Both the position numbers and the translations under genes were made by a program. Of a stretch of 64,000 bases of DNA, positions 7,463-64,000 are shown piece after piece. Numbering within the stretch: position 1 is the stretch's first letter; every line of letters begins with the position of its first letter. The notes under the pieces were generated by a model. That model was not told the DNA's origin and did not search any database. It saw only the letters and a program-made list of their open reading frames with translations. This stretch comes from Chrysemys picta bellii. Taxonomy: Eukaryota. The stretch covers positions 122,388,001 through 122,452,000 of the forward strand of contig NC_088794.1 in the NCBI RefSeq assembly GCF_011386835.1, in the 5' to 3' direction.

Positions 7463-7847
7463 GTAAGTAAAGTTTGTCCAAGAAAGCAATAGCTTAGCTT
7501 TGGAAGCAGATCTCAGTACAGTATTTTCTTACACTCGTATATATATTTTGCCAGTTTTTTAAAATTGTCTTAATTGTCTGTATCATTAATATTTAATGTA
7601 TATGATGTCTGTGGCTTCTGGCTATTAAGAAAATTGTCATGTATGTTGCTTTTTGGATGAAGTAAATATGACCTTTTTAAGCAGGTCTTGCTGCTTTTTA
7701 AGTCCAGTGGGTTTGCTTCTGAGGATTTCTGTAGAGGCCAATTGTTCATTAGCTTGTGGCTTTAAGGCTGCACTTGCTGTATAATTGATTTACATAAGCA
7801 AAGTCACTGAACTTTGATGTAAGGGTGAAGTGCACGTGTCTTCACAG

Positions 7848-8043
7848 AACCTACTAGCCTAAAGTCTTCAGACTCAAACATCTTTGAGAGCAACTTGCCT
7901 TCAAGCAAAAGCAGTTCATGTGGGAGTGATGAGAGACGGCGTGAGGAAATCTTACCACCTCTTGCAGTCTCCAGCACTCGGGCTGAAAGAAATGATTCAA
8001 GAGTTTCAACCAGCTCACAGGAGCAGAGAGCCGCTGCTGCCCG
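7848..8043 (+). CDS. ZC3H14: ZC3H14 exon 5 (EPTSLKSSDSNIFES...DSRVSTSSQEQRAAAAR)
   Basis: cacag|AA...CCCG|gtaagg, 196 bp, open in the correct phase. Confidence 0.93.
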
Positions 8044-8441
8044 GTAAGGCTTCTACCTGCTTATTGGCAAGAGCTCAGATTTCAGGGGATACATCACTGG
8101 AATTGTTGTTTGGAAGAGCAGTAGGGATTAACTAGCTGACGAGACCAGAACAGGAGAATGGAGGCTTTTCCAGTCTCAAGCAGAAAAGGGTTGCCTACTG
8201 TGTGTTGCATAAAATAAATTATACCTGGAAAGTTTACTTCATGCTTCTTTATGCAATACATGTTCTTATCTTAACTAACTAAACTAAAACTAAAAGTAGA
8301 TGTCAAGTCTGCCAGATTTTTTAAAAGAGCAAAATCTTGTTTTTTATTTCTGCTTATATTTAAAGCGTTCTTCTAAATTTTGTTTTTCAGGGATTCTTAT
8401 CTGGCAGTTAGTTAAGACATTGTAACCTCTTCTTTCTCCAG

Positions 8442-8865
8442 GCAGTCTTATGAAGATGGATCTGCATCCCGCTTAATGTCAACGGTCAAGCCTCTAAGAG
8501 AGTTGTCGCCTTCTGAAGCTGTGATTGACATTAAACCTGAACCAGATGATCTCATTGATGAAGACCTAAATTTTGTGCAGGAGAATCCATTGTTGTCTCG
8601 GAAGAAAGCTGTTGTAACTGTAACTTATGGATCTTCCCGTCCTACTGCTGAAATCTACAGACCACCAGCTAGCAGAAGCACGGACAGCCATATACACTTA
8701 CAAAGATTGCCGCAGCAAGGCAGTCTACAGGGTGGTAGGCAGTTGGACATGGAAAGCTGCAGGTCTTTGGAAACAATCCCACTATGTGATCCAGAAGCAT
8801 TTGGCAGCTTAGCAGAGAGTTACAGGCCCACCTCCAAACTGAGTGCTGATAAAATAAGCAGTGAG
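8442..8865 (+). CDS. ZC3H14: ZC3H14 exon 6 (QSYEDGSASRLMSTVKPLRE...KISSE)
   Basis: tccag|G...GAG|gttagt, 424 bp; matches ORF 8476-8883. Confidence 0.95.
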
Positions 8866-9760: not shown

Positions 9761-10338
9761 AGTCACTTCCCTTCCTGGGGTATATTAGACACGCCCCTTT
9801 GAGCTGTTACTTTCTCAATTTAAAAAAAATTAATATTACAATCCTGTATTTAAAAAAAATAGAGGGATATTTATGGAGAGAGCCCTAGAATTTGGAGTTT
9901 TATCATCTTCAGCCTTGCCTTAGACTAGTTTTTGTGTCTTGAAAGGTTTTTCTTTCTTCACCAAAGATGTTGATTTCTGTCACTAAAATCATTTGGCGCA
10001 TCAGTCTGGCTAGTGAACACACTCTGTATTTATCCAAAGATAGTGCTGCTGCATAGGGGAAATAGGAAAGTATAAGCAGTATAAATGATACTCTTGGCAG
10101 CAGAGTTCTGTCTAGGTATTCCTTGGAGGGGATTGTGAGTCACATCCCAAACCTCATTCTTTCTATAGCACTTTTTTTTTCTGCACACAGTGCAATACAT
10201 CCAGGATTTTAAGCGTGTCTCAGTGTCCTAGATTAGTGTTAAAGTGAAAGCTCTCCATCATCTGTATATTGGTGGAATAACAGGGTCTTGTTTGTTTGCA
10301 TATTAATGTGGATCTGATTAATGAATTGTTGGTTGCAG

Positions 10339-10499
10339 GAAGAAAGCTCCAGGAAGAGAAAATTGCCAGTTATAAGCTCAGTGGTCAAAGTGAAAAAGTT
10401 CAGTAATGATGGGGAGGAGGAGGAGGAGGAGGAAGACTATGGGTTACGAATAGGAAGTATCTCCAGCAGTGTGTCTGTACCAGCAAAGCCTGAAAGAAG
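10339..10499 (+). CDS. ZC3H14: ZC3H14 exon 7 (EESSRKRKLPVISSVVKVKK...PAKPER; basic NLS-like RKRK)
   Basis: tgcag|GAA...AGAAG|gtactt, 161 bp. Confidence 0.96.
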
Positions 10500-10838
10500 G
10501 TACTTGAAGATTTCTATGATCTAGTACTGGTTTTTAATATGAATCTAATAAAGGGGAGTATGGAAAAGGAATGAGGTGATGGATAAATCAAGGTTACCTA
10601 AAGGTTTAGTATAGTATGTGAGCTAACTGGTTTAAAACATTAGAATTGAAGAATATCTTATAAAAAGATTTAGTTAGTTAAAGTGTATTTTCAGATTGTC
10701 TTCTAGCAACACTGTACTTAAATATGCAGTGTTTCAACATTTTGTTGAAAGTGAAACATCACAGTACTGGAACATTTACAATGGCTATTGGAATTCATAT
10801 ATCTTCAGGAAAAATTAATTTCTCTCTCTCTCTCTTAG

Positions 10839-10939
10839 ACCTTCACTACCACCCTCCAAACAGGCCAATAAGAATTTAATACTGAAAGCTATATCTGAAG
10901 CTCAGGAATCGGTTACAAAGACAACCAACTATTCCACAG
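10839..10939 (+). CDS. ZC3H14: ZC3H14 exon 8 (RPSLPPSKQANKNLILKAISEAQESVTKTTNYST)
   Basis: cttag|A...ACAG|gtaatt, 101 bp. Confidence 0.96.
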
Positions 10940-11614
10940 GTAATTCATGCTATTTTTATGCTTGGCAAAGCTATGTTATTTCTAAGTCCTTTCAAGGGAG
11001 TTGCTTACATAGCTGCTGATAGGTAGATCTGAAGGTTGATCTGGAGTGTTGAAGAGTTCTTTACATCCAGCTCACGGTCAAAACCAAAGCAAGGAAGTCA
11101 AACTGCCATCCTGATGTCATCAAATTCCACATGCTGCTGCTGTCACGTTCTACACTATTTCCAAGGATCCTTGGGTAGGATTCTTCAGCATCCTGGCTAT
11201 CACAGGTTGATTCAAACGTATCCGTAGCATAGTCATACTGACAGAAGGCAGGAAGAGCAATGGCTTTGAAAGTCACTAGAAAGTCCAATTTGCATTTGCC
11301 GTCCCTTTAACTACAACACTCTTCTGGCCCTGAAAGCTGGGTGAGTGAATGCTGTTGCTAGTGTCAATCTTAGTTCCACTGTAGGCCAGCTGTGGCTCTG
11401 CACCGGCTGTTTGTGTGAGGGATCAGAAGTTGATCTTACAAAGCAGGCGTCCTAAGATTGCAGCACGTGGAACTGCCACTAGGCCAGTCTCTGGACTGCG
11501 TTTAAAGTTATACACTTAGATTGTTGAGAATGAAATTATTTTGGAATTAAATGCAAACGTAGTACCACTATGTGTGTTTTTTTTAACATGCTCAACTGTT
11601 TGACTTATATAAAG

Positions 11615-11770
11615 TTCCACAGAAGCAGACAGTTCCAGTTGCACCCAGAACAAGAATTGCCCAGGATGAAACGCTATTAGAAGTGATCCATGTACAGAGC
11701 CGACCTTCCAGAGTGAGCGCCCAGATTGAGGCAGAAGAACCCAAGGAACAGACATTAGAAAGAATTCAAG
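11615..11770 (+). CDS. ZC3H14: ZC3H14 exon 9 (VPQKQTVPVAPRTR...LERIQ)
   Basis: ataaag|TT...CAAG|gtaatt, 156 bp; weak AAG acceptor but peptide and phase fit. Confidence 0.9.
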
Positions 11771-12538
11771 GTAATTCTGATAATACTTTTCAAAAACCCA
11801 TAAGTGGGAAAGTTACTTTACTTAAACATGGAAGCCTGTTCCAGGCTGATTATCAAGTTGTTGGTCACGTGCATTATGGTAGCATATAAAACTGAAATTT
11901 CACCAAAAGTGCACCAGAAAAAAACAAAGTATGCACTGGAGAAGCAGATTTGAGCACCTTCTAGTGGTGCCGCAGCTTGTTAGTTGCTTCTGTAGCTGTT
12001 GGACTCTCTTAGAAGCCAAGAATCAAAACCATAAAGGGCTTTATAGATCAAAACCAGCCCCTTGTGTTATACCTGGAAATGAGCTGAAAGCCATTGAGGT
12101 TTCTGGAGCAAAAGTGTAATATGTAATAATCGCTTCTGATGAGCCAAGCAGGAAGCAAAGATTTGTATATCCTTCTGGTTTATAGTGAATAATTTCACAT
12201 AATGGAGCTGCCACCAATCAGGATACACTTATTTGCATATGTATTATGTTTGGTTACTATTTCCCCATCCTTAGTATTTTTGACTGTACTCTTCACAGGA
12301 GGGAAGGCTTAATCAGTATCTTATGAAAGAGAGAGAGTTACAGTATTGGAGATATAGAGTCAAGGTGCAGTGTGCTTTGAGATATTACAAAATATTTTCA
12401 GCGTTACTGTTATCAGATGAGTTGTCTTCAAAAGTTTTTACCACTTTATAGGTTTTAAAACGTACTGTAGTCAAGGGTTGTGGGAAGACTGGTAAGACAG
12501 TGGTTACTTAAAATATCAAGCTCTGTCTTCACCTTTGT

Positions 12539-12545
12539 TATAAAA
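12539..12545 (+). promoter_or_regulatory. TATA-like motif upstream of the putative alternative first exon
   Basis: TATAAAA about 55 nt upstream of the ATG at 12601; function is inferred only. Confidence 0.3.
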
Positions 12546-12600
12546 CTGCTAAAAGAAAACCGACTCAACATTAAAGGCAATAAAGAGTATAACTCTGAAA

Positions 12601-13012
12601 ATGTCAGCAAAATATTTAGCTTTTCCTACATCAAAGGGCAGTGCCAGAGCAACAAGTTAAACACCTCACCTGGGCTAACTGAAAGAGAAGCTGCTGTGTG
12701 ACACTCTGATGCACCTGAGGATTCAATTACTGTTTTAAGCATGTTGGAAAAAATATCCAAAGATCTTGCTAAAATTAAGGGAATAAAAGAAATTATTCTA
12801 ACAGCTCAGTCAGATATTTCTGCCCTGAATGCCTTGATAGCAAAGAATGAAGCTGAAATTTCTGCTTTAGAGATTTCAATAAATGAATATGCAGCCTCAG
12901 CAAGTGCATGTGACAGGCAGTTTGAAGTGTTCTTACCGAAACCTAATGGGTTTTGAAAGCCATGTGACAGGCATTAATAAAATAATTTTCACCTTTGGAA
13001 ACACTGACAAAG
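12601..13012 (+). pseudogene. ZC3H14: Degenerate homologue of the alternative first exon of the short ZC3H14 isoform (coiled-coil ORF 12741-12956; donor after 13012)
   Basis: MLEKISKDLAKIKGIKEIILTAQ...KNEAEISALEISINEY...CDRQFE and, in another frame, KIIFTFGNTDK-G|gtaatc resemble the recalled human short-isoform N-terminus; the phase-1 donor matches exon 10; stops and frameshifts break the ORF. Confidence 0.75.
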
Positions 13013-13691
13013 GTAATCCCATTTAAAAAAAAAGGTTTTGGCAGTAAAACCTGCTGGCACTATTGAGCTCTTCTGCTTACCTTCCAGTTAGTTGTGGGAA
13101 GGGCTCATAAATCATTCACTCTCCATCCAGCTTGGATCAAAAACATAAACCTGTTATAATTATATTTTTTGAGATTCGATGCTAGAATTGTGAGAACCCA
13201 AAGGAAGCACAAAAAATCATTTTTATATCGTGTATATACCCAAACTATATAATTTATCTTTCTAGACTTAAAGTTGGCCAAAAAAATAGTCTTCCCTTGG
13301 AAGACCCTTCTCCAGTCTAAATTAGCAATAATGACCAATGTGGGCATTTCATGGCTATTAATGAACCCTGGCAAGAGTTGAGGGCCCAAGGTAAGTCTTT
13401 GTTGGTTTACCCCTTCAGAATTTTGGGTATCTTCATCCCTAGGTTTTCCAAGATCTTTGATACAACCTTTAACAGTGGGATGATTACCTCCATTTTCTCG
13501 AAGAGGGTCACTTAGAATTAGCCTGTAGTTGCTCATTATCTACTCTTCATGTAACTGCACTCATGTGTGCTGCTTTCATGGCTAAGAAACTAATCCTGGC
13601 AAAATCTTAGATAACATACAACATAAATAAGTGATTGGAGTAATAAAAGACCTAATCCTGCATTGGGTTCCACATGGGCCAGGGTCTTGAA

Positions 13692-14026
13692 CAGGGATCG
13701 GCAACCTTTGGCACGCGGCTCACCAGGGTAAGCACCCTGGCGGGCTGGGCCGGTTTGTTTACTTGCTGTGTCCGCATGTTCGGCTGATCGCGCCTCCCAC
13801 TGGCCGCGATTCGCCGCTCCAGGCCAATGGGGGCTCAGGGAAGTGGCGGCCAGCACATTCCTCGGCCCGCGCCGCTTCCCGCAGCCCCCATTGGCCTGGG
13901 ACAGTGAACCGTGGCCAGTGGAAGCCGCGATCGGCTGAACCTGCGGACGCAGCAGGTAAACAAACTGGCCCGGCCTGCCAGGGTGCTTACCCTGGTGAGC
14001 CGTGTGCCAAAGGTTGCCGATCCCTG
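13692..14026. mobile_element. Palindromic hAT MITE
   Basis: TIRs CAGGGATCGGCAACCTTTGGCAC / GTGCCAAAGGTTGCCGATCCCTG with long inverted arms; TSD GTCTTGAA/GTCTTGAG. Confidence 0.92.
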
Positions 14027-15365
14027 GTCTTGAGCAACATGTGCTCTTATGTCTTTGAACCAAATGAGTTGAATATAAATTATATCTACTAGTAAACATC
14101 TTTCTTCCTCCTTCTTTTTCTAAAATCTGTATTTCATAATATTAGCATCTATTCAAAATTAAGAAGTAATTGAGATGAAAATAGTTTAAAAAAATCCAAT
14201 AAATGTCAGTTGTGTTAAAGGAGCACCATCAATTTAATAATCACACTGAAACTTTGTTACTTGCTGTTGCTAGAAAAACACCTACGATTATTATATTTGA
14301 TAGCGATTAGAGGAAACGAATTGTTTTTCTCTCTTTGTTAATGTTTTCTTTGTGCATTTGAGAGCTTTTTTTCTTATAGTCAGGTTCGTTGTTTCTCCTG
14401 TGTATATGTAGTAAGTCTGTTGTGCCTACTGTTTGTGTGTCTTTCATATAGCAACCAGGGAGAGAAAAACATTTAAAGAGAAAAGCTGTCAGGGAGACTT
14501 GGGTGTAGGACATTCAGTTGTTTTCATGTTGTGAAACTGACCAGATTTCAAGTTGACAGGGGGTCTCTGTCTCCTGGGGATTCTAAATATGGCATTCTGC
14601 TTTGGGGTAGATCTGCATCTTCACCAGTGACCCAATGGAATTGCATGTACACTCCAAACTTAAAGGGATTTTCCCAATATTATACCAACCAAAGTGAAGT
14701 TCACTGAACATTTATTATCGCTTCATGTTAATTCTTTTTGCTCAGTTAGCCACTGATCCTGCAAACAAACATGACTTTGCTACTGTAAGTGGTCCCTGTG
14801 AGTGTTTGCAGGATTGGGGTCTTAACCACTTGCTACTGCAACATAAACTTTTTTGAGGAACCCTCATTGCTCACTATTTTCTGTGCATCTTTGCTATAAA
14901 CAAACCTGGTCATGTGTGTGACACTGGGGAAATGGAGTGTGTCCCAGTGCGAAATGTTCAGGGAGGAATTCTTGGTTTTTAAAAAAGAAATTAAGGTAAT
15001 GTAGAAACAGCATAAATAAAGCACATCAAATATCTAGATTAAATTAAAGGATAAAATGGATTTGAGTGGGATCTCTGTCAAGTTGGCTCAACTTCATTGT
15101 CTGGGGGTAACAATTTCCTGTTAAAATTAATCATTGTTTTTTCAATCCCTTGTTTTTGATTTTATTTTTTTATCTAGCCACGTTAGTCTATAGCATTTAA
15201 TGCTGGCAGATTACTTCAGAATAGGAATGAGTTTGAATAGTTAATTTATAATGTATAGGAAAACTTTTCCTGTATCTGTATATGAGATGGTTTCGTGTTT
15301 ATAAACTAAATGTTGGGGGTTTTAAATGGAAATGACTGCTTAGGAACACTATCAACCTATTGTAA

Positions 15366-15630
15366 GGGCCGGTTTACACTAGGTACTTACATCTCTCAGG
15401 GGTGTGACAATCCACACTCTTGAGAGATGTAGCTATACCAACCTATCCCCTTGTGTATACAGCACTACCTTGTCAGAAGAATTCTTCCGTTGACCTAGCT
15501 ACCACTTCTCGGGGATGTGGATTACCTATGCTGACAGGAGAAACCCTCCCGTCAGCGTACGCAGTGTCTCCACTGAAGTGCTATAGCAGTGCAACTGTAC
15601 AGATGTAGCATTTTAAGTGTAGACGTGCGC
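15366..15630. mobile_element. PIF/Harbinger MITE
   Basis: Degenerate TIRs GGGCCGGTTTACACT / AGTGTAGACGTGCGC; TAA on both sides. Confidence 0.75.
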
Positions 15631-16157
15631 TAATTTTTCCAAACGTTAACAATAAATCTAATGCAGAAGAATGTTCTAACCTCATTTGTCTAGCAACTTT
15701 AAAGCATAAAGTAGCCTCTGTTTTAGTTAGTTCCTTGCATTTGAGTGTGCCTGAGAGGAGGCAGCTGGAAATGGGGATACCTGCTGTACTACTCAAAATA
15801 TAGATAATCCCTGTAAAAATAAGGGATGAAGGTGCAAGCAGAACTGATCTTTATAGTACTGTTTCTCCCAGAAGACTATGCATCCACAAACATAATCCAT
15901 GCAGTCACAACAATGGGAAAGATTGGGCTCTCTAAACACCTGGATTTTGGTGTGATCTTGTCCTGCTGGAAGAAATGTTTTATTGCTATATGTTTTGGAA
16001 CATTTGAGATGGAGAAATAAAAACACAGAAATGAAAATTTCTTCCTCTGTTAGTTTTGATTTTTTTTTAAGATCAGAAAGAAAGGAGAGTTAGCAGTTGG
16101 GTCCTCTTTTAATTTTGACATGCAGTAAAATGTGCTTCTAATCCATATTTTCTTTAG

Positions 16158-16232
16158 GAACTCAACAAATGCAGCTCTTTTCCCGACTCCAGACTGAACC
16201 GTTAATTGAAGAAACTTTGCAAATGACTCAAG
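16158..16232 (+). CDS. ZC3H14: ZC3H14 exon 10 (GTQQMQLFSRLQTEPLIEETLQMTQ)
   Basis: tttag|GA...CAAG|gttaag, 75 bp, symmetric phase 1. Confidence 0.92.
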
Positions 16233-16684
16233 GTTAAGGATGGCTTTTCTTTTTTTCTTTTTGAAAATGTGATAGTTTGACCAAAGAGGCCATTGTATTT
16301 TAGGTTTAAAATAGCACTTCCCTTTAAATTAGTTATATTTGTAATGTCCTCTAGTTTTTATACGTTAAGTAAAATCTTTCCATCAGTGGGTGCCAAAAAT
16401 GAGATATTGGTGAATAGAGCCAGCTGCTGCTGCAGAGCCAGCCCGATAACAAACTCCTAGTGATCAGGCCATAGGCTGCTCCACCTTCAGCTGATATAAT
16501 CAGAGTTGGTGCATAAAGAAGGAAGTACACTCATTTTCTGTTTAAAAACTAGTACAGAGAATTGAAAACAAAATGCTAGTTGGTTGGTCTCTTCGAAATT
16601 ATTATTCAAAAACATGACTGTATACTAAAGTGCAATACAGTGGTTCTTTTATTCCAACTTTGATCCAATTTTTCTGTGACTCAG

Positions 16685-16844
16685 ATTATTATGACGTGGA
16701 GAGTGTGGTCCACACTGATACTAGATCATTTATTCTGAAAAAGCCAAAGCTATCTGAGGAAATAGTAGTGCCACAGAACCAGGAATTGGGAAAGAAGGCT
16801 GCAGAGGCAATGCGGGCACTTTCAGGACGTCTTATACAGACAAG
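16685..16844 (+). CDS. ZC3H14: ZC3H14 exon 11 (DYYDVESVVHTDTRSFILKKPK...LIQTR)
   Basis: ctcag|AT...ACAAG|gtaaaa, 160 bp. Confidence 0.95.
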
Positions 16845-17316
16845 GTAAAAATTCAGTCCTTTACTTCATTTAAAGAAGTAACGGGACCAAATATAAGCCA
16901 AGTCTTGTTACTGTAATGTATCTTGTAATTGGTTAGAATGTTTATTTAAATGTAACAGGTTGGAAGAACAAATTCATTTCTTGGTTTCCATGCTGCAGAA
17001 GCCCAATCAAGACTGATGAAAACATGGACAAAAGAGCCTGCAGCCCAGCCCAAACTCGGAAATCCTGACACTCATTTCTTTTAAATTGAAAGTGTGTCCC
17101 AGGCTTGTGGTTAGAGCAATTTTTTCATTTACCAGGAAAATAGAAAAAGGAATTGGATGGCTTGCAGGTATCAGAGGGTGGCCCACTTGTATTGTCATTT
17201 TTATTACAGCTGTTACATCTTGCTGAAATCTAAGCAATAGTTTGCATGGGGTCTTGTTAAGGAGTTTTAATTTTGTTTAACTTTTTTACTCATTATATTT
17301 ATTCTTAGCCCATCAG

Positions 17317-19821: not shown

Positions 19822-20045
19822 AGAGCAGCTTGCACAACCAGAAAAGCCTGCTAGCCCCAAGTTCATTGTGACACTGGATGGTGTCCCCAGCCCACCAGGG
19901 TACATATCTGATCAAGAAGAGGAGGAAAGCTGTATAACTGAAGGAGTGAAGCCAGTTACCCAAAATGCAGCTGCAAACAAGGGATTAAAAAGCTTTCAAG
20001 CACAGCAGATGCAGGTTATAAGCAGGCAGCTGGAGAGCCCTTATG
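19822..20045 (+). CDS. ZC3H14: ZC3H14 exon 12 (EQLAQPEKPASPKFIVTLDGVPSPPGY...LESPY)
   Basis: tttag|A...TATG|gtaaat, 224 bp. Confidence 0.95.
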
Positions 20046-22156
20046 GTAAATTATCCTAGCCAACAGGGCCTTCATATTGGAGTTAGATTACTTTTTAATG
20101 TGGGGCTTTCATACTGGGGAGAACTCTCAAGCCTACCAGCCTTAAACATCACTCCTTGCATTGTTTTTATATTATTTGTTCAGGGTGTAATGAGAGCACA
20201 AAAGTGAAAGTTCAGCATTTTAAGGGGATAGGGCCGTTTAACCTGCTGACCAAGAGCAGTAGCTGAAATTGTTCTCCACACAGCTTTATATGTCAGTAAA
20301 ATTAGATAAGTCGTTTCTTTTAAACTTCAGTGAACTTTTACTTGTCAGAAAGAGCCATCATTCCCCTTACTTGCTGCATGATTGGCCCCAGGCAGGACAG
20401 TATGTTCTGAGATGCACCTTATTAAATTGTATTGAGCCATTGAAAATGTGCCAGGTTGTGGTGGTAACCATGATCTTTCGGGCCAGATTTGTTCATTTCA
20501 AAAGCTGTTTTTAATGATAAAGACTGTCTTTCAAATTGGTAGAATCTTTCAAAATAGAAGACACTTTACCTATGATCACTGTATGTTTTTCTTAATATCT
20601 CATACATTCAGAATACCCTGCCCAGGAATTTAGAACATCGGCCTCTTTTAAGCTGTTTAGAACTCTGTTTTTGAAATGTTGATTTTGGAATGCAAAGTAA
20701 AACTCACTTTAAAATGTGGAGTTTCCTTTCTCTTGGGCTCCTTAAACACTCGCTGGTTTGAGGTCATGTTTACATTCAGGATTTCCATTTGTAGTACGAG
20801 AATGTCAGTCCCTCAGATAATAACAGTGCATCAACATTTCCTGAATGTGTATATAAGAAACTCAGGGCTAGGTACTATGCTGAGTACCCTCAACTCCATT
20901 CACTGGATCAGGGCCGAAATCAGTGAAATGCCTAGAGGTCTTTTTAAAGGATAGTTTCAGAAAGTTTGCTTAATAGGGAGATTTAGGCACTGATCCTGCA
21001 AATACTTGCTTGCATGCTTAGCTTCATGTGCTGCTTAGTTTGCTTCAGTGGGACTGCTCACAGCACATAAAGCTAAGCAAGGGAGTAAGTTGTAGAATTG
21101 GAGCCAGGATTTGAAGCAGCTTGGAGAAGATAGAGTTTCAGATGGGGCAGTACCACTCAGTTTTGAAGGAAGGTGAATCGGGTCCATAAATGAGGCCAGT
21201 AATGGAATGAGGGTGCAGAAAGATTGCTACTAGTGAGGATGGAGAGGGATATTGGTGTGAATTTTGAATTGCATGTGGATAGTTAAGAACCCAGTGAAGG
21301 TGCCAGAGAATGAGGGATAGGGCAATCCTATTCTGAATCCTCAGAACAGGACAGGGTAGAGATTTAAGAACAACTGAAGAAGGGAATTGCAGGAGGGAAA
21401 CCAAGAAGTGATTAAAGTGCAGTGATTGTATGAAAGTTGCACCTTCTTACTCAACAGTTCAGCTTGCCCTGTTAATAAGGAGTCCTGTCTGCTGAGTGCA
21501 GTGTCAGAAGTAACTTCTTAATGCTGCTTTTTCATGATTGTCTCCCAAAGCCAAAACTATCCATGAGAAAGGGAGGTTTTATTCTGACACATGCATCAAC
21601 AGAACAGTTAGTGAAGTTTCAGTTGCAGAATCTTTTTCTTAGTCCAGTCAGAGTAAGGAAGGATCCAGTTTTTGTTTGCATATCTGGCAGAAAACCATTT
21701 TTTTTACTAGTAAACTGAGCTCATTTGATGATCTGTAAGTCCTTGAAAGATGATAAATATCCAACCCTAGGATGTTTTTAGTAATTTTAAGAAGAAAGTA
21801 AGGATTTAGCAGGGACAGTCTTGTGTAGGTTTCAATGGGCTGGGGTATACACTGCGGAACTATTGAGTGCACAATTATTTTTGATCACTTTGTAATTGAG
21901 AAATTAACCCACTAAATAAAATATTGCAGCTTTCACCAGCTAGCAATCTCCACTCTAGTTAGAGGTTGACTAAACTCTGTGTATGTTCAGGTGATCTGAA
22001 GTCTTGAGAGATTTCAATTTTTGTATAAAAGCTTGTCGTATGTTGGTGAGAAAGCAGTCTGTGCAGGGAACATGCTGAATTTAAAGGGTGGTCTGCTTCA
22101 TAAACCAAACTGCACATGTAATAAAAGACGGTCCCTGTGTCATTTCTCCCCCACAG

Positions 22157-22277
22157 TGGAGATGGAGGAATTGACTGGGCTGCAGAAACAAGAGAAAGTG
22201 CTTGAGCGTTGCAAGTACTGGCCTGCCTGTAAAAATGGAGATGAATGTGCATACCACCACCCCACATTACCATGCAA
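22157..22277 (+). CDS. ZC3H14: ZC3H14 exon 13 (first CCCH finger CKYWPACKNGDECAYHH)
   Basis: cacag|TG...TGCAA|gtaagt, 121 bp. Confidence 0.97.
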
Positions 22278-22590
22278 GTAAGTGCTACAGAACTCGATGA
22301 CATCTGATCTTCTTTGTCCTTCTGGGCTCTAAATGCTGTGTTAGTTATTTCACATCTGTTACTCAATTAACATGTTTCATGGTGGGAGATGGGAGTTGAA
22401 CTTTGCTTTGTAAATGTAACTTCCTCTCCCCTTCTGCTTTCCTCTCTTTCACCATGTGGCAGAATTTAGTGGTATTTACAATCAGCAGAGTCACATCTGA
22501 TCTCCTGCAGGAGAGAGCCTTTTACACTGTGCAGGATGCTGTTTGTCTGAGCTCTTTATAAGAGAGCTGGGAGTGTACTGTACTGTCAGA

Positions 22591-22826: not shown

Positions 22827-23269
22827 AAGATGCCTCAGCTAGGTGTCCCCAGAGGTTTGAGCACAATTGCTCCCATGTATATGGTGGTACAATGCTTTTT
22901 GGCTTAAAAGCAAAGATTTAGAGGAGTTGTCCTGAAGATTTTACTGTGCTATTGACTCTTTTTCAACTGGCAGCGACTGTCCAGAATAGCTCTCTTGCTG
23001 TTGTTCTCCTGGATTGCTGCATGTCAGGCAGGCACTCAGCTTTACTAGCTCCGGTCAGAAGAAGGGAAACTGAACCACATCACAGTGGAACAGGCATGGT
23101 CCACCTAAGAGAATGTACACTGTTGTGGGATTCATTCCACAAGGTGGAATCTTTCTGATACAGGGTTAGCTGACAGATCATCAAGCCCTTGCTTTCCCCA
23201 CCCTCTATCCCACAGTGAGGGAGTGGAGAATAAAATTCACATCTTGATGCTGATTGATTCAATGCATCT

Positions 23270-23320: not shown

Positions 23321-24167
23321 TGACTGGGAAAGCAGATTCTCAGTCTGAAATTAATCAAAGGGGACCATAGTACTGTAAAAGAGCATATTCCTTGTATTTG
23401 TACTTAGTACAGTAGATAGAGTGATTCAAGGTTGTATAGTAAGTGCACTTGCTTTATGAATGGTGGTATTCTCTGTGGTTTGCATTACTTTGTCTCACAA
23501 ATGAATGAGATAATATTTTGGAAGGCGTTTATGGCAGCTTCTCATTTCTCCAAAAGGCAATGATACATTGTAACGTATGCCACCCTATACCTCTGAATTT
23601 CTGGTAGACAAACACAAGTGGTTCCACTCCACAATAATTCTGAAAAGAAAATTCACGTGAGATCAGAATACTAGTTCTTTTATCGCCCTCAAACTGAGAT
23701 TGAAAAGGCGACATTGTTGGGTCCAAGTATTCAGTACCCAGTGAAAATGATTCTCCTGGGGCGTGTACAGCTTGTGGTGTTCCTGCAGTGGGAACTCAGA
23801 AGCTGAATCTTAGACATGTTTTGTCTGGTTTGCTTAGCCTTTCAGCTGTGGTTTTAAATCTAACTGCCTTCACTCTGCTGTTTGGGGATATACTGGTGCT
23901 CTTTTTAGATAGCAGGTATTATCAGACTTGGGGTCCATCAGCCTTGATGTTGTCTTGTTGAAAGAGTTCATTTTGAATTACGGCCTTACATCATCTAATC
24001 CTTATTTGGAAATCTCACCTTCTGCAAAATGAATTCACTCTCTTTCTGGGTGCTATGGCTCAGACCGTATCTGATCTGCGGGAACTGTAGTTTGCTCTGG
24101 AGCAGGTGTGCACTAGCTGCTGCATGGAATATGGTTCAAATAACTGGTTTGGGTTTTTTTCCCCCAG

Positions 24168-24304
24168 AGTCTTTCCCAGTTGCAAATTTGCTGATAAATG
24201 CCTGTTTATCCACCCCAACTGTAAATACGATGCAAAGTGTACTAAGCCAGACTGCCCTTACACTCACGCCAGCCGACGAATCCCATTGCCGCCTCCCAAA
24301 CCAG
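24168..24304 (+). CDS. ZC3H14: ZC3H14 exon 14 (CCCH fingers 2-3)
   Basis: cccag|A...CCAG|gtgagc, 137 bp; VFPSCKFADKCLFIHPNCKYDAKCTKPDCPYTH. Confidence 0.97.
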
Positions 24305-26217: not shown

Positions 26218-26312
26218 CACCACTACAAGCCCCACCAGCAACCTCCAACAGTCAGCTCTGCAGATTTTTCCCCGCTTGTAAGAAAATGGAATGTCCATTT
26301 TATCATCCAAAA
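26218..26312 (+). CDS. ZC3H14: ZC3H14 exon 15 (CCCH finger 4, CRFFPACKKMECPFYHPK)
   Basis: aacag|CA...AAA|gtaaga, 95 bp. Confidence 0.96.
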
Positions 26313-30780: not shown

Positions 30781-30887
30781 CACTGTAGATTTAACACCCA
30801 GTGTACCAGACCAGACTGCCCATTCTACCATCCCACTATTGCTGTACCTCCACGTCATGCCTTGAAATGGACTAGAACTCAAACCAG
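30781..30887 (+). CDS. ZC3H14: ZC3H14 exon 16 (CCCH finger 5, HCRFNTQCTRPDCPFYHP...ALKWTRTQTS)
   Basis: tttag|CAC...ACCAG|gtaatc, 107 bp. Confidence 0.97.
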
Positions 30888-32200
30888 GTAATCTAAGCAA
30901 TCTTTCACTGTGGTTAGCTTTTAAGGCCCTGATCATCTGAATACATATACACATGTGTAAGTTTACTTACGTGAGTAGCCCTGTTGCATGTATGCATAAA
31001 TGTTCATTGGGTTAGGGCCTAAGATTGGTAATTATTTCACAATGCTATTGTGTAGCAATGGTCAAAGGCTAATCTGTCTTTGAACCAGAGCTCTGTATTT
31101 GTTGTTTTGAACAGTGACTTAAACTGTTACTAACTCAACCCTTAGAAATGTGAAAAATCAGAGGTCTGCAGTGAGGGCGTGGAATAGAGCAAACAAGGTT
31201 CCAGGCCTGTGCCCAAAGACTAAGAGTGCATTGTTCTCCCTTGAGTCAGACTGTAAACTGCACATCTGTTCTTCCTTGTTCCTGGTCTCATGTCATGGTA
31301 CATGACACCCCAGATGGCTCAGGTCAGGTCTGCTTGCTCCTTTTAGTGTTCCTCATGTCATAGCAAAACAGCCTTCTTCCTATCACGGCCAATGAGTCCA
31401 CAAACCCCTAGCAAACTGGTTAGTCAACGAACTGCCATGGGAATTAGCCATCATCCTACGTATCAGTGTTTTTTTTAAGGCTCTGAACCAAGAAAATGTT
31501 ACAGTTTACTCTGAAAATATCCACGTGAGGGGAATTTATTTACCTGTAAAAATTTTGGCTGAGGGGGAAAGATGACAAAATGTAATATAAAATAGCCAGT
31601 GTTTAAAGTTGAAATAGCTTGTGTTGAGAGTAAATGCTTAAGTGTTTCTTGTTTTACTGGGAAAGTTTAAGATCGCTGTTGATAAAATTATTAGCAGAAT
31701 TTACATATTTCTTTCTGTATGTTATGCAAGTCATTGAAGGTGAATAGTACCTGTAATTTGTTTCGTCTCCTCGTACTTAATTGGTAACTTATAATATCCA
31801 CTGTTCCAAGAGTTAAGTATATTGTAAAACTCATTAAGAAAAATCTATACCATTAATCTGCATCTCTTTATATGCCAGTACTGTTAGGATTAAATCCTGT
31901 GGTGTCAGCAAGAGCTGCAGGTTTTGGAAATTGAAGTCAGTGGAAGTTGCAAGCGCTCAAAATAGCTGAAAATCAGGCTCTTTCTTAAGGTGCCTAAACA
32001 GAGATTTAGGAACTTAACTTTAGGCATCAAGTTTGAAAATGTTCACCTTTCTTTTAAATGCTCAGCTCTCTTGAGCATTTCTCACCATTTAATATCCCCT
32101 GAAATGGAAGTCTTGATACTTGAATCATTAAGACGCTAGGACAACACTTGTCAAATCATCTATAATAGGCTTGTTAATTATGTGGTTTTTCCCCCCCCAG

Positions 32201-59818: not shown

Positions 59819-60759
59819 TAGGGTTGCCAGATGTCCGGTTTTAGATCGGAACACCCAGTCGAGAAGGAACCCTGGCGACTCCAGTCAGCACCACTGACGG
59901 GGCTGCTAAAAGTCTGGTCGGCTGTGCAGTGGGTCTAAGGCAGGCTTTCTGTCTGCCCTGGTTCCGAGCAGCTCCCAGAAGCGGTGGCATGTCCGTCTCT
60001 AAGGCACAGGGACAGCCTTGGGGGCTCTGTGTGCTGCTCCTGCCCCAAGCGCTGGCTCTGCAGCTCCCACTGACTGGGAACTGTGGCCAATGGGAGCTGC
60101 GGGGGTGGCGCCTGCAGGCATGGGAAGCACACAGAACCCCCTGGCCTCTCCACCTAGGAGCCAGACATGCCGGCTGCTTCCTGGGAGCCACGTGGAGCCA
60201 GGAAGCCTGCCTTAGCCCTGCTGCGCCATGGACCGGGAGCCGCCTGAGGTAAGCGCTGCCCAGACGGAGCCCACACCCCAACCCCCTGCCCCAGCTCAGA
60301 ACTGCCTCTCGCACCCTAATTCCCTCCCAGAGCCCACACCCTGCACACACGCCCACAGCTCAACTCCCTGCCCCAGCCCTGAGCCCCCTCCTGCACCCCA
60401 AACACCTCATCCCCAGTCCCAACCCAGAGCCCACAGCCCAGCTGGAGCCCACACACCCTTCTGCACCCCAACCCGCTGCCCCAGCCCTGAGCCCTCTCCT
60501 GCACCCTGAACCCATCATTTCTGGCCCCACTGCGGAGCCCGTACCCCCAGCCAGAGCCCTCACCCACTCCTGCACTCCAGCCCCTTGCCCCAGCCTCATG
60601 AAAGTGAATGAGGGTGGGGGAGAGTGAATGACAGAGGGAGAGGGCATGGAGTGAGTGGGAGGTGGGGCCTCAGAGAAGGGGTAGGGGCCTCAGGAAGTGG
60701 CGTGGCAGGGGTGGGGCAAGGGTGTTCAGTTTTGTGCGATTAGAAAGTTGGCAACCTTA
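59819..60759. mobile_element. Non-autonomous hAT element with GC-skewed minisatellite-like interior
   Basis: Ends TAGGGTTGCCA / TGGCAACCTTA; TSD GGCTCTGG/GGCTCTGA. Confidence 0.88.
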
Positions 60760-61303
60760 GGCTCTGAGTGCACCAGCAACTTTGTAGTCATGGTCTGGGT
60801 ATGAACTTGCCAGTTGGGAAGGGGAGAGAGAGAAGGAGCAGGACAATGCAGAAGAGAGGATGGGCAACAAAACCCAAGGTCCTGTGGTCTAAAACCTTGA
60901 ACTCAGAGCAGAGATGCTATGAATGACTGTTTACTATAATTGGGCCTGTGTTGTAATTTCAGAGATTATAATTTCAGAGGAGGAGCAGTTTAGGCATCAC
61001 ATTTCTGAGAGTTTCAGCTTGTTCTGTGGTCTTTGAGTGTCAATCAGTCAAGTCTCTAGAGGACTCCTTCTGGGTGTGAAAAGATTTATATTGAGTAGAA
61101 AGAAATAGATTCGATACAAAACAATGAAACAAGGTTTACTTTCATTATTATAAATGGAGGTCAAGGGATTTTCTTATCCATTGTTTACAAGGATGATTCA
61201 CTGGAAATACATTTGGCAATTATCACAATAGTTGAGCACATTTATCTTATTTTTAACTTGTACAATATATGCTATGTAACATTTATTACAATCATTTTTT
61301 TCA

Positions 61304-61591
<288 letters not shown>

Positions 61592-62289
61592 TCAACAATT
61601 ATTTGTTATATGCTTACAAACAAAGGCAACATTTTTGCTACTGAAAGCCAATGAGTTTTTTAACACTAGAAAAATGAAATTGTTTTGGTAAAAAAAAAAA
61701 GGGGGAAATTTTGGTCTCACCTTATAAACTGACTTTTTGCAAACAAGACCACCAGTCTGGACTGCAGGCTTGTTGTTGTTGTTCCATATTATATTGGTGC
61801 AAGTAGCTCCACCCTTTAGTTGGTTGCTGAGCTTCTGAAACCCAACAGAGCCCCTCAGACCAGGAGTCCTCTCTTGTTTTCAACCTGAGATAAACTTTCC
61901 TTAGCTTGAAACAATAACTCAAAGTCTGAGAACTTCGAAACATACCTTCTCTAGTAGTATGTAACCTGGCACAGGTTTAATACCTGGGTGAGACTTTCAT
62001 ACTGGTGGTTTCTGCAGAAAGTCAGTTTACAAGACAAGAACAAAATTTCCTTTTCTATAAGGTGCCCACCAGTTTGGAATGCAAGCTTTATATCTAGCAG
62101 TATGCCAGCTGAATCACTGGTAGGCTTACTGAGGTAGAAGAACTAGAGGTGTGTATCTTGGTATGAGTTACTTAGATTGTAAACTCTCTGGGGTAGGGAT
62201 GGTCTTTCCACAATATGCATGTACATTATTAATCATGATGATGATGATGATGATTTATGACTATGGTAGTGCCTAGAAGTCAGGGACAC

Positions 62290-63256
62290 ACCAGGCGGCC
62301 AGGTAGAGAGCGGGGACGGGCTGCGCTGCTGGGCCCATTCGGGTCCGGAGCACTCGGGCCAGGCCGGGGGGAGCATGCGCGGCGGCGCGGGTCCGGGGGG
62401 AGGGGAAGCATTCGCAGTGGCAGGGGACCGGGGGGAGCATGCACGGCAGCGGGGCTGGGCACGTGCCGCTCGACAATATTGGGGCTGGCGGCCGGGGGGA
62501 GAAGCGGCGAGGGGGAGGAGGCTGGGCGCCTCAGCAGCAGCCTTGAGGGAAAGGCTCCGTTTGGCTGGGCTCAGTGCTGCCGGCCACCCCGCTGAGAACG
62601 GCCTGGCTCAGTGCACCCGCCGCGGGGGAGGGGGAGGAGGAGAGAGGGGAGGGGGCACGGCCGGAGGAGCGATGGGGGAGGGCGCGGCCTCCGCCACATC
62701 CTCCCGTGTCCTCTGGGGCGGTGGCCCTTCCCGGCAAGGCGGCCGCCGCGCAGCGCGGGAACATGGTGGCAAGAGGGACCCGCAGCTCTCCAAACGCGCT
62801 GCTGCTGCCGGCTCCGCTCCGCAGGCAGCCGCCGGCCTGTGTGTGCCAGGCGCAGCTCTGACACACACTCCCCTCCTCCTGCCCACCCTCCCTTATCACG
62901 GCTGCTCCCGCTCCCCGCCGCGGCTGCTGGGAGCCGATTAATAATTGATGGCAACAGCCCGGCTGCCGAAGCAGGGCGAGGTGTGCAGCCGGGCTCAGGC
63001 GGGCGGGTGGCCGCTTGCTGCTCAGCCTGCCGAGCTGCGAGCCCCGGCCCAGCGGGCATCGGCAGCAGAGGGGCGGGGAAAGGGCTGGCCAGGGACAATG
63101 GCAGGAGGGATGAGATGCGGGGGCGTGGGAGAGGAGCTGGGTGGGCGCGGAGCAGCCGGAGGAGGAGCCATGGGGGGCGTGGCCAGAGGAGGAGCCAAGG
63201 GGGGGCGCCTTTTTTATGTTTGCTCCCCCTGCTCTTAAAACCTGGCTACGCCACTG
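62290..63256. mobile_element. CpG-rich segment ending in one hAT-type TIR (one-ended element or captured CpG-island cargo)
   Basis: Right end ...AAAACCTGGCTACGCCACTG at 63256; no matching CAGTGGCGTAGCCAG left end seen; very GC- and CpG-rich. Confidence 0.55.
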
Positions 63257-63300
63257 ATCACAGAGACAGTCCCTTCCAAAAGAGCATACAGTCTAAGCAT

Positions 63301-63412
63301 GTTTCAGAGTAGCAGCTGTGTTAGTCTGTATCCGCAAAAAGAACAGGAGTACTTGTGGCACCTTAGAGACTAACAAATTTATTAGAGCATAAGCTTTCGT
63401 GGACTACAGTCC
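63301..63412. mobile_element. Penelope-like terminal-repeat fragment
   Basis: GTTTCAGAGTAGCAGCTGTGTTAGTCTGTATC...GGCACCTTAGAGACTAACAAATTTATT..GCATAAGCTTTCGTG; paralogous to 29602-29700. Confidence 0.8.
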
Positions 63413-64000
63413 AGTTCATGTCTAATCATGGTTTGCAATCTGTGTATAGAGCCTGGTACAATGAGGCCCCAATCCTGACTAAGGCTTGGACTTTCAGAGG
63501 TGTGTAAGTGACTCAGCAGCACAAACCTACTTGAAAAATCAGTAACAACCTTTGCAGAAGGAAGACAGAAGGACACTCCTTCAACTTATGAAGAGTCCTG
63601 AAAAGAGTGGATCCAGAAGGCTCTTTTCTGCTATGAAGATTTCCTTCATGCTGTTACACAGCCACATTGGCTTAACAAAATAGAAACCCTCCCCCTGCTC
63701 CTTTTTTTAAAACCTTACATAGCACAAAACAGGGAATCGAATCTGTGAAAATCCTGGGAAGATTCATTTGTTTGTATAGGCATCCAACTTCCTGAGCTAA
63801 GAAAACTACCTTGTCAAACCTCTCGCAGAACAGGTAGACAAGACCTTAGAACATGTTGAAGACTGTTTTCAGGTGGACCAATTTCTGAGAGCACACTAAT
63901 TCACTCTCCTTAAGGCTAATAATAAACCCCATATGAGTAAGCAGCTGTACTGACTCACAAACTAGTTTTGGAGCCTCTAGAGATGACTGAGCTTTCAGAA

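What the first reader, a model, noticed from the sequence alone, without database searches (positions are those of the whole stretch)
12539..13016. Decaying homologue of the alternative first exon of the short ZC3H14 isoform, with TATA motif and donor retained
Seen: TATAAAA at 12539; ATG at 12601 in the context L-K-M-S; a 71-aa heptad-rich ORF (12741-12956); then in a different frame KIIFTFGNTDK-G ending at a phase-1 GT donor (13012|gtaatc), exactly compatible with exon 10. Known (recalled, needs checking): mammalian ZC3H14 has a short, testis-enriched, cytoplasmic isoform whose unique first exon lies between exons 9 and 10 and reads ...LLRKISADINEIKGMKAAILTVE...KNEAKISSLEVKMNEY...CNRQFE...KIIGFLRNVEK|GTQQ. 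Inference: the exon predates the mammal/reptile split. Here ATG 12601 and the donor are net in frame (137 codons + 1 nt), but stops (12658, 12699, 12954) and two frame changes intervene. Either the exon is being lost, or it was rewired: ATG 12883 opens a 43-codon frame into exon 10, leaving the coiled coil as an overlapping upstream ORF or micropeptide. CATGTGACAGGCA occurs twice, 54 bp apart (12907, 12961), near the frameshift.
Basis: partly seen in the sequence, partly recalled or inferred. Interest (0 to 1): 0.75.

Follow-up and report, generated by a model that had tools for sequence, protein, structure and literature searches.

The report
Relic ZC3H14 short-isoform exon in turtles
An intron of a turtle's ZC3H14 gene holds the recognisable but broken remains of the alternative first exon that in mammals makes the short, testis-enriched form of this RNA-binding protein, so the exon is older than mammals and appears to have been abandoned in reptiles.

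Summary
Window 12702-12953 (+), in ZC3H14 intron 9, is the only stretch of the 64-kb window that matches a profile of the mammalian isoform-4 N-terminus (E 1.8e-19). The 71-aa ORF hits mammalian short ZC3H14 isoforms among 1.8 billion proteins (E 5e-10). The match is colinear and on the gene's strand. It ends at a phase-1 GT donor (13012|GT) that fits exon 10 (16158).

The exon is coding in placentals, a marsupial and platypus. In turtles it is broken differently in each lineage:
- this turtle: -1 at 12645, plus +1 at 12943 shared with Gopherus
- Gopherus: an extra +1 and a stop
- Caretta: +1
- Pelodiscus: stops and indels
- Mauremys: whole exon deleted

A TGA at 12699 is shared by all four turtles that keep the exon. 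An independent DNA sample confirms this turtle's lesions.

Among turtles the exon changes at the intron rate, with dN/dS about 1. No homologue was found in alligator, two birds or two squamates. Three RNA runs of unknown tissue show exon 9>10>11 splicing but no junction from 13012.

Verdict: a neutrally decaying relic exon, kept legible by slow turtle DNA evolution. The "rewired" and micropeptide readings lack support. Interest is modest.

The parts
11614..11770 (+). ZC3H14 exon 9 (context: upstream constitutive exon)
   Evidence: tblastn with opossum P0057 residues 376-428. RNA contigs join 11770 to 16158 with GT..AG ends in X15 and X16.
12539..12545 (+). TATAAAA motif upstream of the relic exon
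   Evidence: Read directly. Kept in Gopherus and Pelodiscus; TTTTAAAA in Caretta. No evidence of promoter activity. Flank 12440-12600 is no more conserved than the intron.
12601..12660 (+). Upstream ATG and its short ORF (20 codons here; 33 codons up to the shared TGA in other turtles)
   Evidence: ATG conserved in four turtles. No detectable similarity to the mammalian N-terminus (about -2 bits).
12645..12645 (+). Site of a 1-nt deletion specific to this turtle's lineage (other turtles read GCCAAGAGC)
   Evidence: MAFFT of four turtles. Absent as a difference in the independent sample X5 and in relatives X16 and X17, so it is real and shared by close relatives.
12699..12701 (+). TGA in the homologous frame, shared by all four turtles that keep the exon
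   Evidence: It lies just upstream of the statistically alignable core.
12702..12953 (+). Core of the relic exon: coiled-coil segment homologous to the mammalian isoform-4 N-terminus
   Evidence: Mammal-only HMM E 1.8e-19, the only hit in the window. tblastn with bilby P0028 E 8.8e-16. BLASTP 42% identity, 70% positives, no gaps over 71 aa.
12741..12956 (+). 71-aa ORF (Met aligns with Leu-42 of the mammalian peptide); ends at TGA 12954 because of the +1 at 12943
   Evidence: The ORF is not conserved: Gopherus has a frameshift 2 codons in, Caretta stops after 10 codons, Pelodiscus stops at codon 23.
12943..12943 (+). 1-nt insertion shared with Gopherus (Testudinoidea) and absent in Caretta and Pelodiscus; it separates the coiled coil from the tail frame
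   Evidence: Without it the frame from ATG 12741 runs open to the donor.
12944..13012 (+). Tail of the exon (M-G-F-E-S ... K-I-I-F-T-F-G-N-T-D-K + G) ending in phase 1
   Evidence: Colinear with mammalian D-F-E-S ... K-I-I-G-F-L-R-N-I-E-K. It adds about 4 bits when appended in frame but is not significant alone.
13013..13018 (+). GTAATC splice-donor motif
   Evidence: AAAG|GTAAT identical in four turtles. RNA contigs of three runs read straight through it unspliced.
16158..16233 (+). ZC3H14 exon 10 (phase-1 acceptor; G-T-Q-Q...), the exon to which the mammalian alternative exon splices
   Evidence: In P0028, P0044 and P0064 the alternative peptide is followed directly by the exon-10 peptide. 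The 16233>16684 joint is seen in three RNA runs.

Best explanation
This is a relic (pseudo-)exon. It is the turtle orthologue of the alternative first exon that gives mammalian ZC3H14 its short, cytoplasmic, testis-enriched isoform 4.

The exon existed in the common ancestor of mammals and sauropsids. In the turtle lineage it stopped being maintained as coding sequence, at or before the base of living cryptodires. Since then it has drifted at the neutral intron rate and picked up different stops and frameshifts in each lineage. One lineage deleted it outright. It is still legible only because turtle DNA changes very slowly.

Shown:
- homology of the core
- position, strand and donor phase
- lineage-specific lesions
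- neutral rate and dN/dS about 1
- deletion in Mauremys
- no detectable copy in five other sauropsids
- no spliced use in three RNA runs

Inferred:
- that the ancestral turtle frame from ATG 12741 to the donor was open
- that the shared TGA 12699 was the first lesion
- the timing of the loss
For: Homology:
- E 5e-10 and 6e-9 against 1.84e9 proteins. The hits carry Nab2-type zinc fingers.
- tblastn E 8.8e-16.
- the only hit in the window, E 1.8e-19.
- 42% identity over 71 aa without gaps.

Context:
- The stretch lies between exon 9 (11614-11770) and exon 10 (16158) on the gene's strand, with a phase-1 donor.
- The exon is coding in placentals, a marsupial and platypus.

Decay:
- The four-turtle alignment shows -1 at 12645 in the window lineage only and +1 at 12943 in window plus Gopherus only.
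- It shows +1 at 12746 and a stop in Gopherus, and +1 at 12767 in Caretta.
- It shows three additional stops, +1, -2, +1 and -6 in Pelodiscus, and TGA 12699 in all four.
- Mauremys lacks window 12279-13819, with no Ns.
- Exon versus intron identity is 93.2 vs 94.9%, 92.7 vs 93.0% and 84.9 vs 83.8% (p 0.16-0.84). Exons 9-11 are 97.7, 95.4 and 92.7% identical.
- dN/dS is 0.62-1.35, with no excess of third-position changes.

Reality of the lesions:
- Independent DNA sample X5 has no indel in the exon.
- Relatives share the lesions, and two of them add a further 1-nt deletion at 12717.

Use:
- RNA contigs show 11770>16158 and 16233>16684 but nothing from 13012.
- They cross the donor unspliced at intron-level depth.

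Other sauropsids:
- nhmmer best E 0.48; protein HMM best E 1 or worse in alligator, Centrocercus, Crypturellus, Python and Phrynocephalus.
Against: - The tissues of the three RNA runs are unknown. A testis-restricted transcript could be missed, and contigs drop rare forms.
- ATG 12944 (M-G/D/N-F-E-S), the donor and the tail frame are intact in all four turtles. A short unique N-terminus spliced to exon 10 is therefore possible on sequence alone, although 85-93% neutral identity predicts this anyway.
- With only 23-39 substitutions per pair (ATG 12741 to the donor), dN/dS has wide error and partial or past constraint cannot be excluded.
- The frame-corrected reading has only 1 stop in 137 codons here. 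This shows the loss is not ancient relative to the turtle mutation rate.
- Only one crocodilian, two birds and two squamates were examined. No pleurodire, tuatara or amphibian was examined.
Confidence: 0.8

Rival explanations
1. The exon is still used. It would be an alternative promoter and first exon whose old coiled-coil coding part has been given up. Translation would start at a downstream ATG (12883 or 12944 in the donor frame, or the Met inside exon 10) and yield an N-terminally truncated ZC3H14 with the zinc fingers.
For: - The TATAAAA motif, ATG 12944 and the AAAG|GTAAT donor are present in all four turtles that keep the exon, except that Caretta reads TTTTAAAA at the TATA site.
- The donor phase fits exon 10.
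- In Caretta the coiled coil and the tail are even in one open frame.
- RNA tissues are unknown.
Against: - There is no junction from 13012 in three RNA runs that do show the neighbouring canonical junctions. Contigs read through the donor at intron depth.
- The promoter side and the exon are no more conserved than the intron.
- Mauremys has deleted the whole region.
- Both ATGs near 12883 are lost in Gopherus.
- No turtle protein starting with this exon appeared in the exhaustive protein search.
Confidence: 0.08
2. Proto-exon. The sequence was never coding in the sauropsid line. Mammals exonised an intronic stretch that both lineages inherited.
For: - No sauropsid protein with this exon was found.
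- Turtle copies evolve neutrally.
Against: - The frame-corrected turtle reading is colinear with the mammalian coding frame over the roughly 84 codons that align significantly, with 42% identity, 70% positives and the heptad pattern kept.
- It has only one stop in 137 codons, where roughly ten would be expected from the base composition (my estimate).
- It ends at a donor in the same phase.
- A never-coding sequence would not keep a 100-codon open frame in the mammalian register.
Confidence: 0.07
3. The 71-aa coiled-coil ORF (12741-12956) is a functional micropeptide or upstream ORF in its own right.
For: - It is an intact ATG-initiated ORF with weak coiled-coil family matches (Fib_alpha E 8.6e-4, below the cut-off).
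Against: - The ORF exists only in this lineage. It is frameshifted in Gopherus, stops after 10 codons in Caretta, stops at codon 23 in Pelodiscus and is deleted in Mauremys.
- dN/dS is about 1.
- There is no expression above intron level.
Confidence: 0.02
4. The similarity is chance coiled-coil resemblance, or the stretch is a fragment of a repeat (for example LINE ORF1), and not a ZC3H14 exon.
For: - The top phmmer hit P0001 and several others are generic repetitive coiled-coil proteins.
Against: - Those hits are sums of many short stretches at 26-33% identity. The ZC3H14 hits are one colinear stretch at 46-48%.
- The locus is single copy in DNA reads: depth 36-45, like its flanks.
- There is no transposon domain in Pfam.
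- Position, strand and donor phase match the mammalian exon.
Confidence: 0.01

Closest known systems
Alternative first exon of mammalian ZC3H14 isoform 4 (short, cytoplasmic, testis-enriched; Leung et al. 2009 as cited in PMC3988569, PMC13174606 and PMC13730566)
   Same: - Same gene and same strand.
- It lies upstream of exon 10 and ends in a phase-1 donor.
- The central coiled-coil segment is 42-48% identical and colinear.
- The tail carries the same F-E-S and K-I-I landmarks before the donor.
   Different: - It is not an intact ORF here: a TGA at 12699, -1 at 12645 and +1 at 12943.
- No spliced transcript was seen.
- It evolves at the intron rate.
- The first 33 codons show no detectable similarity to the mammalian N-terminus.
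Unitary pseudogenes and 'dead' alternative exons (loss of one isoform while the gene stays functional)
   Same: - There is a single orthologous copy.
- The disabling mutations are lineage specific.
- dN/dS is about 1.
- One lineage has a complete deletion.
- The host gene's constitutive exons stay conserved and spliced.
   Different: Only one alternative first exon is affected, not a whole gene. It stays legible after a very long time because turtle neutral rates are low.

Membership tests
Orthologue of the ZC3H14 isoform-4 alternative first exon | Significant sequence similarity to the isoform-4-specific N-terminal peptide | tested here: met
   (E 5e-10 against 1.84e9 proteins; E 1.8e-19 within the window). 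This holds for the core 12702-12953 only. The head and tail are not significant alone.
Orthologue of the ZC3H14 isoform-4 alternative first exon | Located in the ZC3H14 gene, sense strand, between exon 9 and exon 10 | tested here: met
   Exon map from opossum P0057 and RNA joints. The same position holds in Gopherus, Caretta and Pelodiscus. The mammalian genomic position was not checked directly; it is inferred from the peptide junction to exon 10, 11 or 13.
Orthologue of the ZC3H14 isoform-4 alternative first exon | Ends at a GT donor in phase 1 compatible with exon 10 | tested here: met
   13012|GTAATC and AG|16158 restore a Gly codon followed by T-Q-Q. The donor is identical in four turtles.
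Functional isoform-4 first exon | Uninterrupted ORF from a start codon to the donor | tested here: not met
   Stops at 12658, 12699 and 12954 and two frame changes. Confirmed in an independent DNA sample.
Functional isoform-4 first exon | Spliced to downstream ZC3H14 exons in RNA | tested here: inconclusive
   There is no joint from 13012 in three RNA runs that do show the 9>10 and 10>11 joints. Tissue is unknown, and the data are contigs only.
Functional isoform-4 first exon | Testis-enriched expression and cytoplasmic protein | not testable with these tools
Functional isoform-4 first exon | Purifying selection on the peptide | tested here: not met
   dN/dS is 0.62-1.35, codon positions change equally, and the rate equals the intron rate.
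LINE ORF1 or other repeat-derived coiled coil | Multi-copy in the genome and a match to a transposon protein family | tested here: not met
   Single-copy depth in DNA run X5. No transposon family in Pfam. No such hit in the exhaustive protein search.

The most novel reading that the evidence does not exclude
The exon is not dead everywhere. In at least some turtles it may still work as a testis-specific alternative promoter and first exon. One candidate is the sea turtle, where the coiled coil and the tail share one open frame. Another route is the conserved ATG 12944 that reads into exon 10. Either would give sauropsids a cytoplasmic ZC3H14 isoform that no annotation shows, and the turtle lineages would then record repeated, ongoing loss of a germline isoform.
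Probability: 0.07. Interest if true: 0.5.

Novelty: new member of a known kind. Interest (0 to 1): 0.35.

Why it matters
The finding dates the isoform-4 first exon of ZC3H14 to before the mammal/sauropsid split. This exon makes the one isoform spared by the best-characterised human intellectual-disability mutation (R154X), and the isoform's function is still unclear (PMC3988569). The papers read here describe it only in mammals.

It also shows that a whole vertebrate branch has done without the isoform. The exon is decayed in turtles and undetectable in the crocodilian, birds and squamates examined. That bears on how essential the cytoplasmic/testis isoform is.

It is also a clean small example of how slow turtle DNA evolution preserves "fossil" exons that let isoform histories be read. 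The result is of modest interest: it is ordinary exon death and no new mechanism is involved.

Tried and rejected
1. Finding sauropsid short isoforms by protein search. P0003 residues 1-121 returned only mammals. The profile A2 (bilby plus window exons as separate rows) returned 120 mammals, of which platypus P0064 was useful. Sauropsid full-length proteins came only from a region-limited query (P0057 262-380), chosen because the turtle is closer to opossum there than placentals are.

2. MAFFT alignments of many exon fragments (A1, A4) were scrambled and were not used.

3. Look-ups for Emydura X3, Macrochelys and Carettochelys X2 were "not on record". No pleurodire, chelydrid or second trionychian could therefore be compared.

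4. The alligator intron 9 gave one nhmmer hit at E 0.48. It was treated as noise because the protein profile found nothing.

5. Pfam on the ORFs gave only sub-threshold coiled-coil matches. The 143-aa minus-strand ORF at 13108-13536 has no family.

6. Rfam on 12300-14200 gave only sub-threshold miRNA-like hits inside the repeat at 13807-13911.

7. The 13-nt repeat CATGTGACAGGCA (12907, 12961) is exact only in this lineage. In other turtles the two sites differ at 3-4 positions. I do not link it to the frameshift at 12943.

8. No human contig was fetched or compared. A human protein returned by the search tool (P0036) served only as one row in protein alignments.

Full report
**1. What is in the sequence**

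- TATAAAA at 12539
- ATG 12601 in the context L-K-M-S
- a 71-aa ORF at 12741-12956
- in another frame, a peptide ending K-I-I-F-T-F-G-N-T-D-K plus one G at 13012, followed by GTAATC
- an acceptor AG before 16158, whose exon reads (G)-T-Q-Q-M-Q-L-F
- stops at 12658, 12699 and 12954
- the 13-nt repeat at 12907 and 12961

**2. Gene context**

tblastn with opossum ZC3H14 (P0057) and with short isoforms maps the gene across the window. Exons lie at:
- 2016-2135
- 7838-8044
- 8416-8865
- 10336-10500
- 10837-10938
- 11614-11770 (exon 9)
- 16158-16233 (exon 10)
- 16684-16845
- 19829-20056
- 22156-22278
- 24160-24303
- 26220-26312
- 30781-30888

The finding therefore lies in intron 9, on the sense strand. 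Exon peptides are closest to Chrysemys and Trachemys (about 98%), so the window comes from a testudinoid, emydid-like turtle.

**3. Is it homologous to the mammalian exon?**

- phmmer of the 71-aa ORF against 1.84 billion representative proteins found two proteins hit in one colinear stretch over residues 1-65 at 46-48% identity. They are P0002 (E 5.1e-10) and P0003 (E 5.7e-9).
- P0003 is a narwhal ZC3H14 of 277 aa with Nab2-type zinc fingers.
- The nominal top hit P0001 and most others are generic repetitive coiled-coil proteins hit in many short pieces.
- A profile of ten mammalian N-termini, run against all 3842 six-frame pieces of the window, hits only 12702-12953 (E 1.8e-19; next best E 1.6).
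- BLASTP against bilby gives 30/71 identities, 50/71 positives and no gaps.
- The tail (12946-13011) and the head (12601-12698) are not significant alone.
- The tail adds about 4 bits when read colinearly. It shares F-E-S and K-I-I landmarks and the phase-1 donor with the mammalian peptide.
- The locus is single copy in DNA reads and has no transposon domain, so the LINE-ORF1 refutation test fails.

**4. What is known**

Three papers state that isoform 4 is short, has a unique first exon, is cytoplasmic and is highly expressed mainly in testis. All cite Leung et al. 2009 (PMC13174606, PMC3988569, PMC13730566).

In the protein data the exon is coding in many placentals, a marsupial (P0028) and platypus (P0064). 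The alternative peptide is followed directly by the exon-10 peptide (P0028, P0044, P0064), by exon 11 (P0036) or by exon 13 (P0003).

**5. Are the lesions real?**

Contigs of an independent DNA sample of the same organism (X5) cover 12027-13695. Inside the exon they differ only by 12810 T>G, with no indel. Close relatives (organisms B, D, E) share the lesions. D and E carry an additional 1-nt deletion at 12717.

**6. Is it used?**

Runs X15-X17 are RNA, because they contain spliced ZC3H14 contigs: 11770>16158 in X15 and X16, and 16233>16684 in all three.

None has a joint from 13012. Their contigs run through the donor (12661-13187, 13002-13232, 12911-13219). In X16 and X17 the depth there matches the rest of the intron (about 3-6 against 22-140 on exons). 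In X15 intron depth is close to exon depth throughout.

Tissue is unknown and these are contigs, so this is absence of evidence only.

**7. Other sauropsids**

Full gene loci were fetched for nine species:

| Locus | Species |
|---|---|
| L001 | Pelodiscus |
| L002 | Gopherus |
| L003 | Centrocercus |
| L004 | Python |
| L005 | Alligator |
| L006 | Caretta |
| L007 | Phrynocephalus |
| L008 | Crypturellus |
| L009 | Mauremys |

The exon homologue sits in intron 9 of Gopherus, Caretta and Pelodiscus. Over window 12300-13300 it is 92, 93 and 80% identical at the DNA level.

It was not found in alligator, the two birds or the two squamates by any of three methods:
- tblastn
- nhmmer with the turtle alignment (best E 0.48)
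- a mammal-plus-turtle protein profile (best E 1 or worse)

Intron 9 is only about 1-1.7 kb in the birds and squamates, and 3.6 kb in alligator.

In Mauremys mutica, window 12279-13819 is replaced by about 300 nt with no Ns. The exon is deleted there.

**8. Pattern of decay**

The four-turtle alignment shows these changes:

| Site (window coordinates) | Change | Where |
|---|---|---|
| 12645 | -1 | window lineage only |
| 12943 | +1 | window and Gopherus only |
| 12746 | +1 | Gopherus |
| one new stop | stop | Gopherus |
| 12767 | +1 | Caretta |
| 12680 | +1 | Pelodiscus |
| 12856-57 | -2 | Pelodiscus |
| 12885 | +1 | Pelodiscus |
| 12979-84 | -6 | Pelodiscus |
| three new stops | stops | Pelodiscus |
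| 12699 | TGA | all four |

ATG 12601, ATG 12741, ATG 12944 and the donor are kept in all four.

Once lineage-specific indels are removed, all four read as 137 colinear codons that align end to end with the mammalian peptide. By parsimony, the frame from ATG 12741 to the donor (about 91 codons) was open in the cryptodire ancestor. This is an inference. The net in-frame count in this turtle is a coincidence of two indels that cancel.

**9. Selection**

In the frame-corrected reading, pairwise dN/dS is 0.62-1.35. Substitutions are spread evenly over codon positions.

| Comparison with the window | Relic exon identity | Intron background identity | Fisher p | Exons 9-11 identity |
|---|---|---|---|---|
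| Gopherus | 93.2% | 94.9% | 0.16 | 97.7% |
| Caretta | 92.7% | 93.0% | 0.84 | 95.4% |
| Pelodiscus | 84.9% | 83.8% | 0.66 | 92.7% |

The promoter-side flank is no better conserved than the intron. The exon has therefore evolved neutrally through crown-turtle history.

The 71-aa ORF and the ATG-12883 ORF are not conserved in other turtles.

**10. Conclusion**

This is the orthologue of the mammalian isoform-4 first exon. It was inherited from the amniote ancestor, is no longer maintained in turtles, and is absent or unrecognisable in the other sauropsids examined. It survives as a legible fossil because turtle neutral rates are low.

- The rewired and micropeptide alternatives are unsupported but not formally excluded without testis RNA.
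- A proto-exon origin is unlikely, because the frame stays open and colinear.

**11. Limits**

- No pleurodire, tuatara or amphibian was examined.
- The joined spliced model was not searched.
- No human contig was fetched.

Noticed in passing
window 13690-14030: A very high-copy repeat. DNA-run depth is about 10^6 against about 36 for the flanks, with many contig ends and strand-switch joints. Sub-threshold miRNA-like hairpin hits fall at 13807-13911. It is probably a MITE or SINE-like element. It is absent from the Caretta and Pelodiscus alignments at this spot.
   Followed up: partly
L009 (Mauremys mutica) 22893-23196, versus window 12279-13819: A 1.5-kb deletion or replacement removes the whole relic exon. 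The right edge abuts the high-copy repeat, part of which (window 13689-13898) aligns in inverted orientation. This suggests a repeat-mediated rearrangement.
   Followed up: partly
window 13535: Three other samples or species (X5, X15, X16) carry 13 extra bases (TTCTGTAGAGCTT) behind 13535 that the window lacks. This is an indel polymorphism or a deletion private to the assembled individual.
   Followed up: no
window 12907-12919 and 12961-12973: The exact 13-nt repeat CATGTGACAGGCA is exact only in this lineage. Other turtles differ at 3-4 positions between the two sites. At the first site this lineage changed two adjacent bases (AG to CA) towards the second copy, which may be a templated multi-base change.
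   Followed up: partly
window 12810: Three states occur at one site: T in the window, G in an independent sample of the same organism (X5) and C in organism D (X15).
   Followed up: no
window 11400-17000, run X15: In RNA run X15 intron contigs have nearly the depth of exon contigs (about 16 against 24.5). In X16 and X17 the intron-to-exon depth ratio is about 1:5 (X17) to 1:30 (X16). X15 probably holds much pre-mRNA or genomic DNA.
   Followed up: no
window 60200-64000: A GC-rich end of the window (48-56% GC) with weak, non-significant tblastn matches to the zinc-finger region. It may be a CpG island or the first exon of a neighbouring gene.
   Followed up: no
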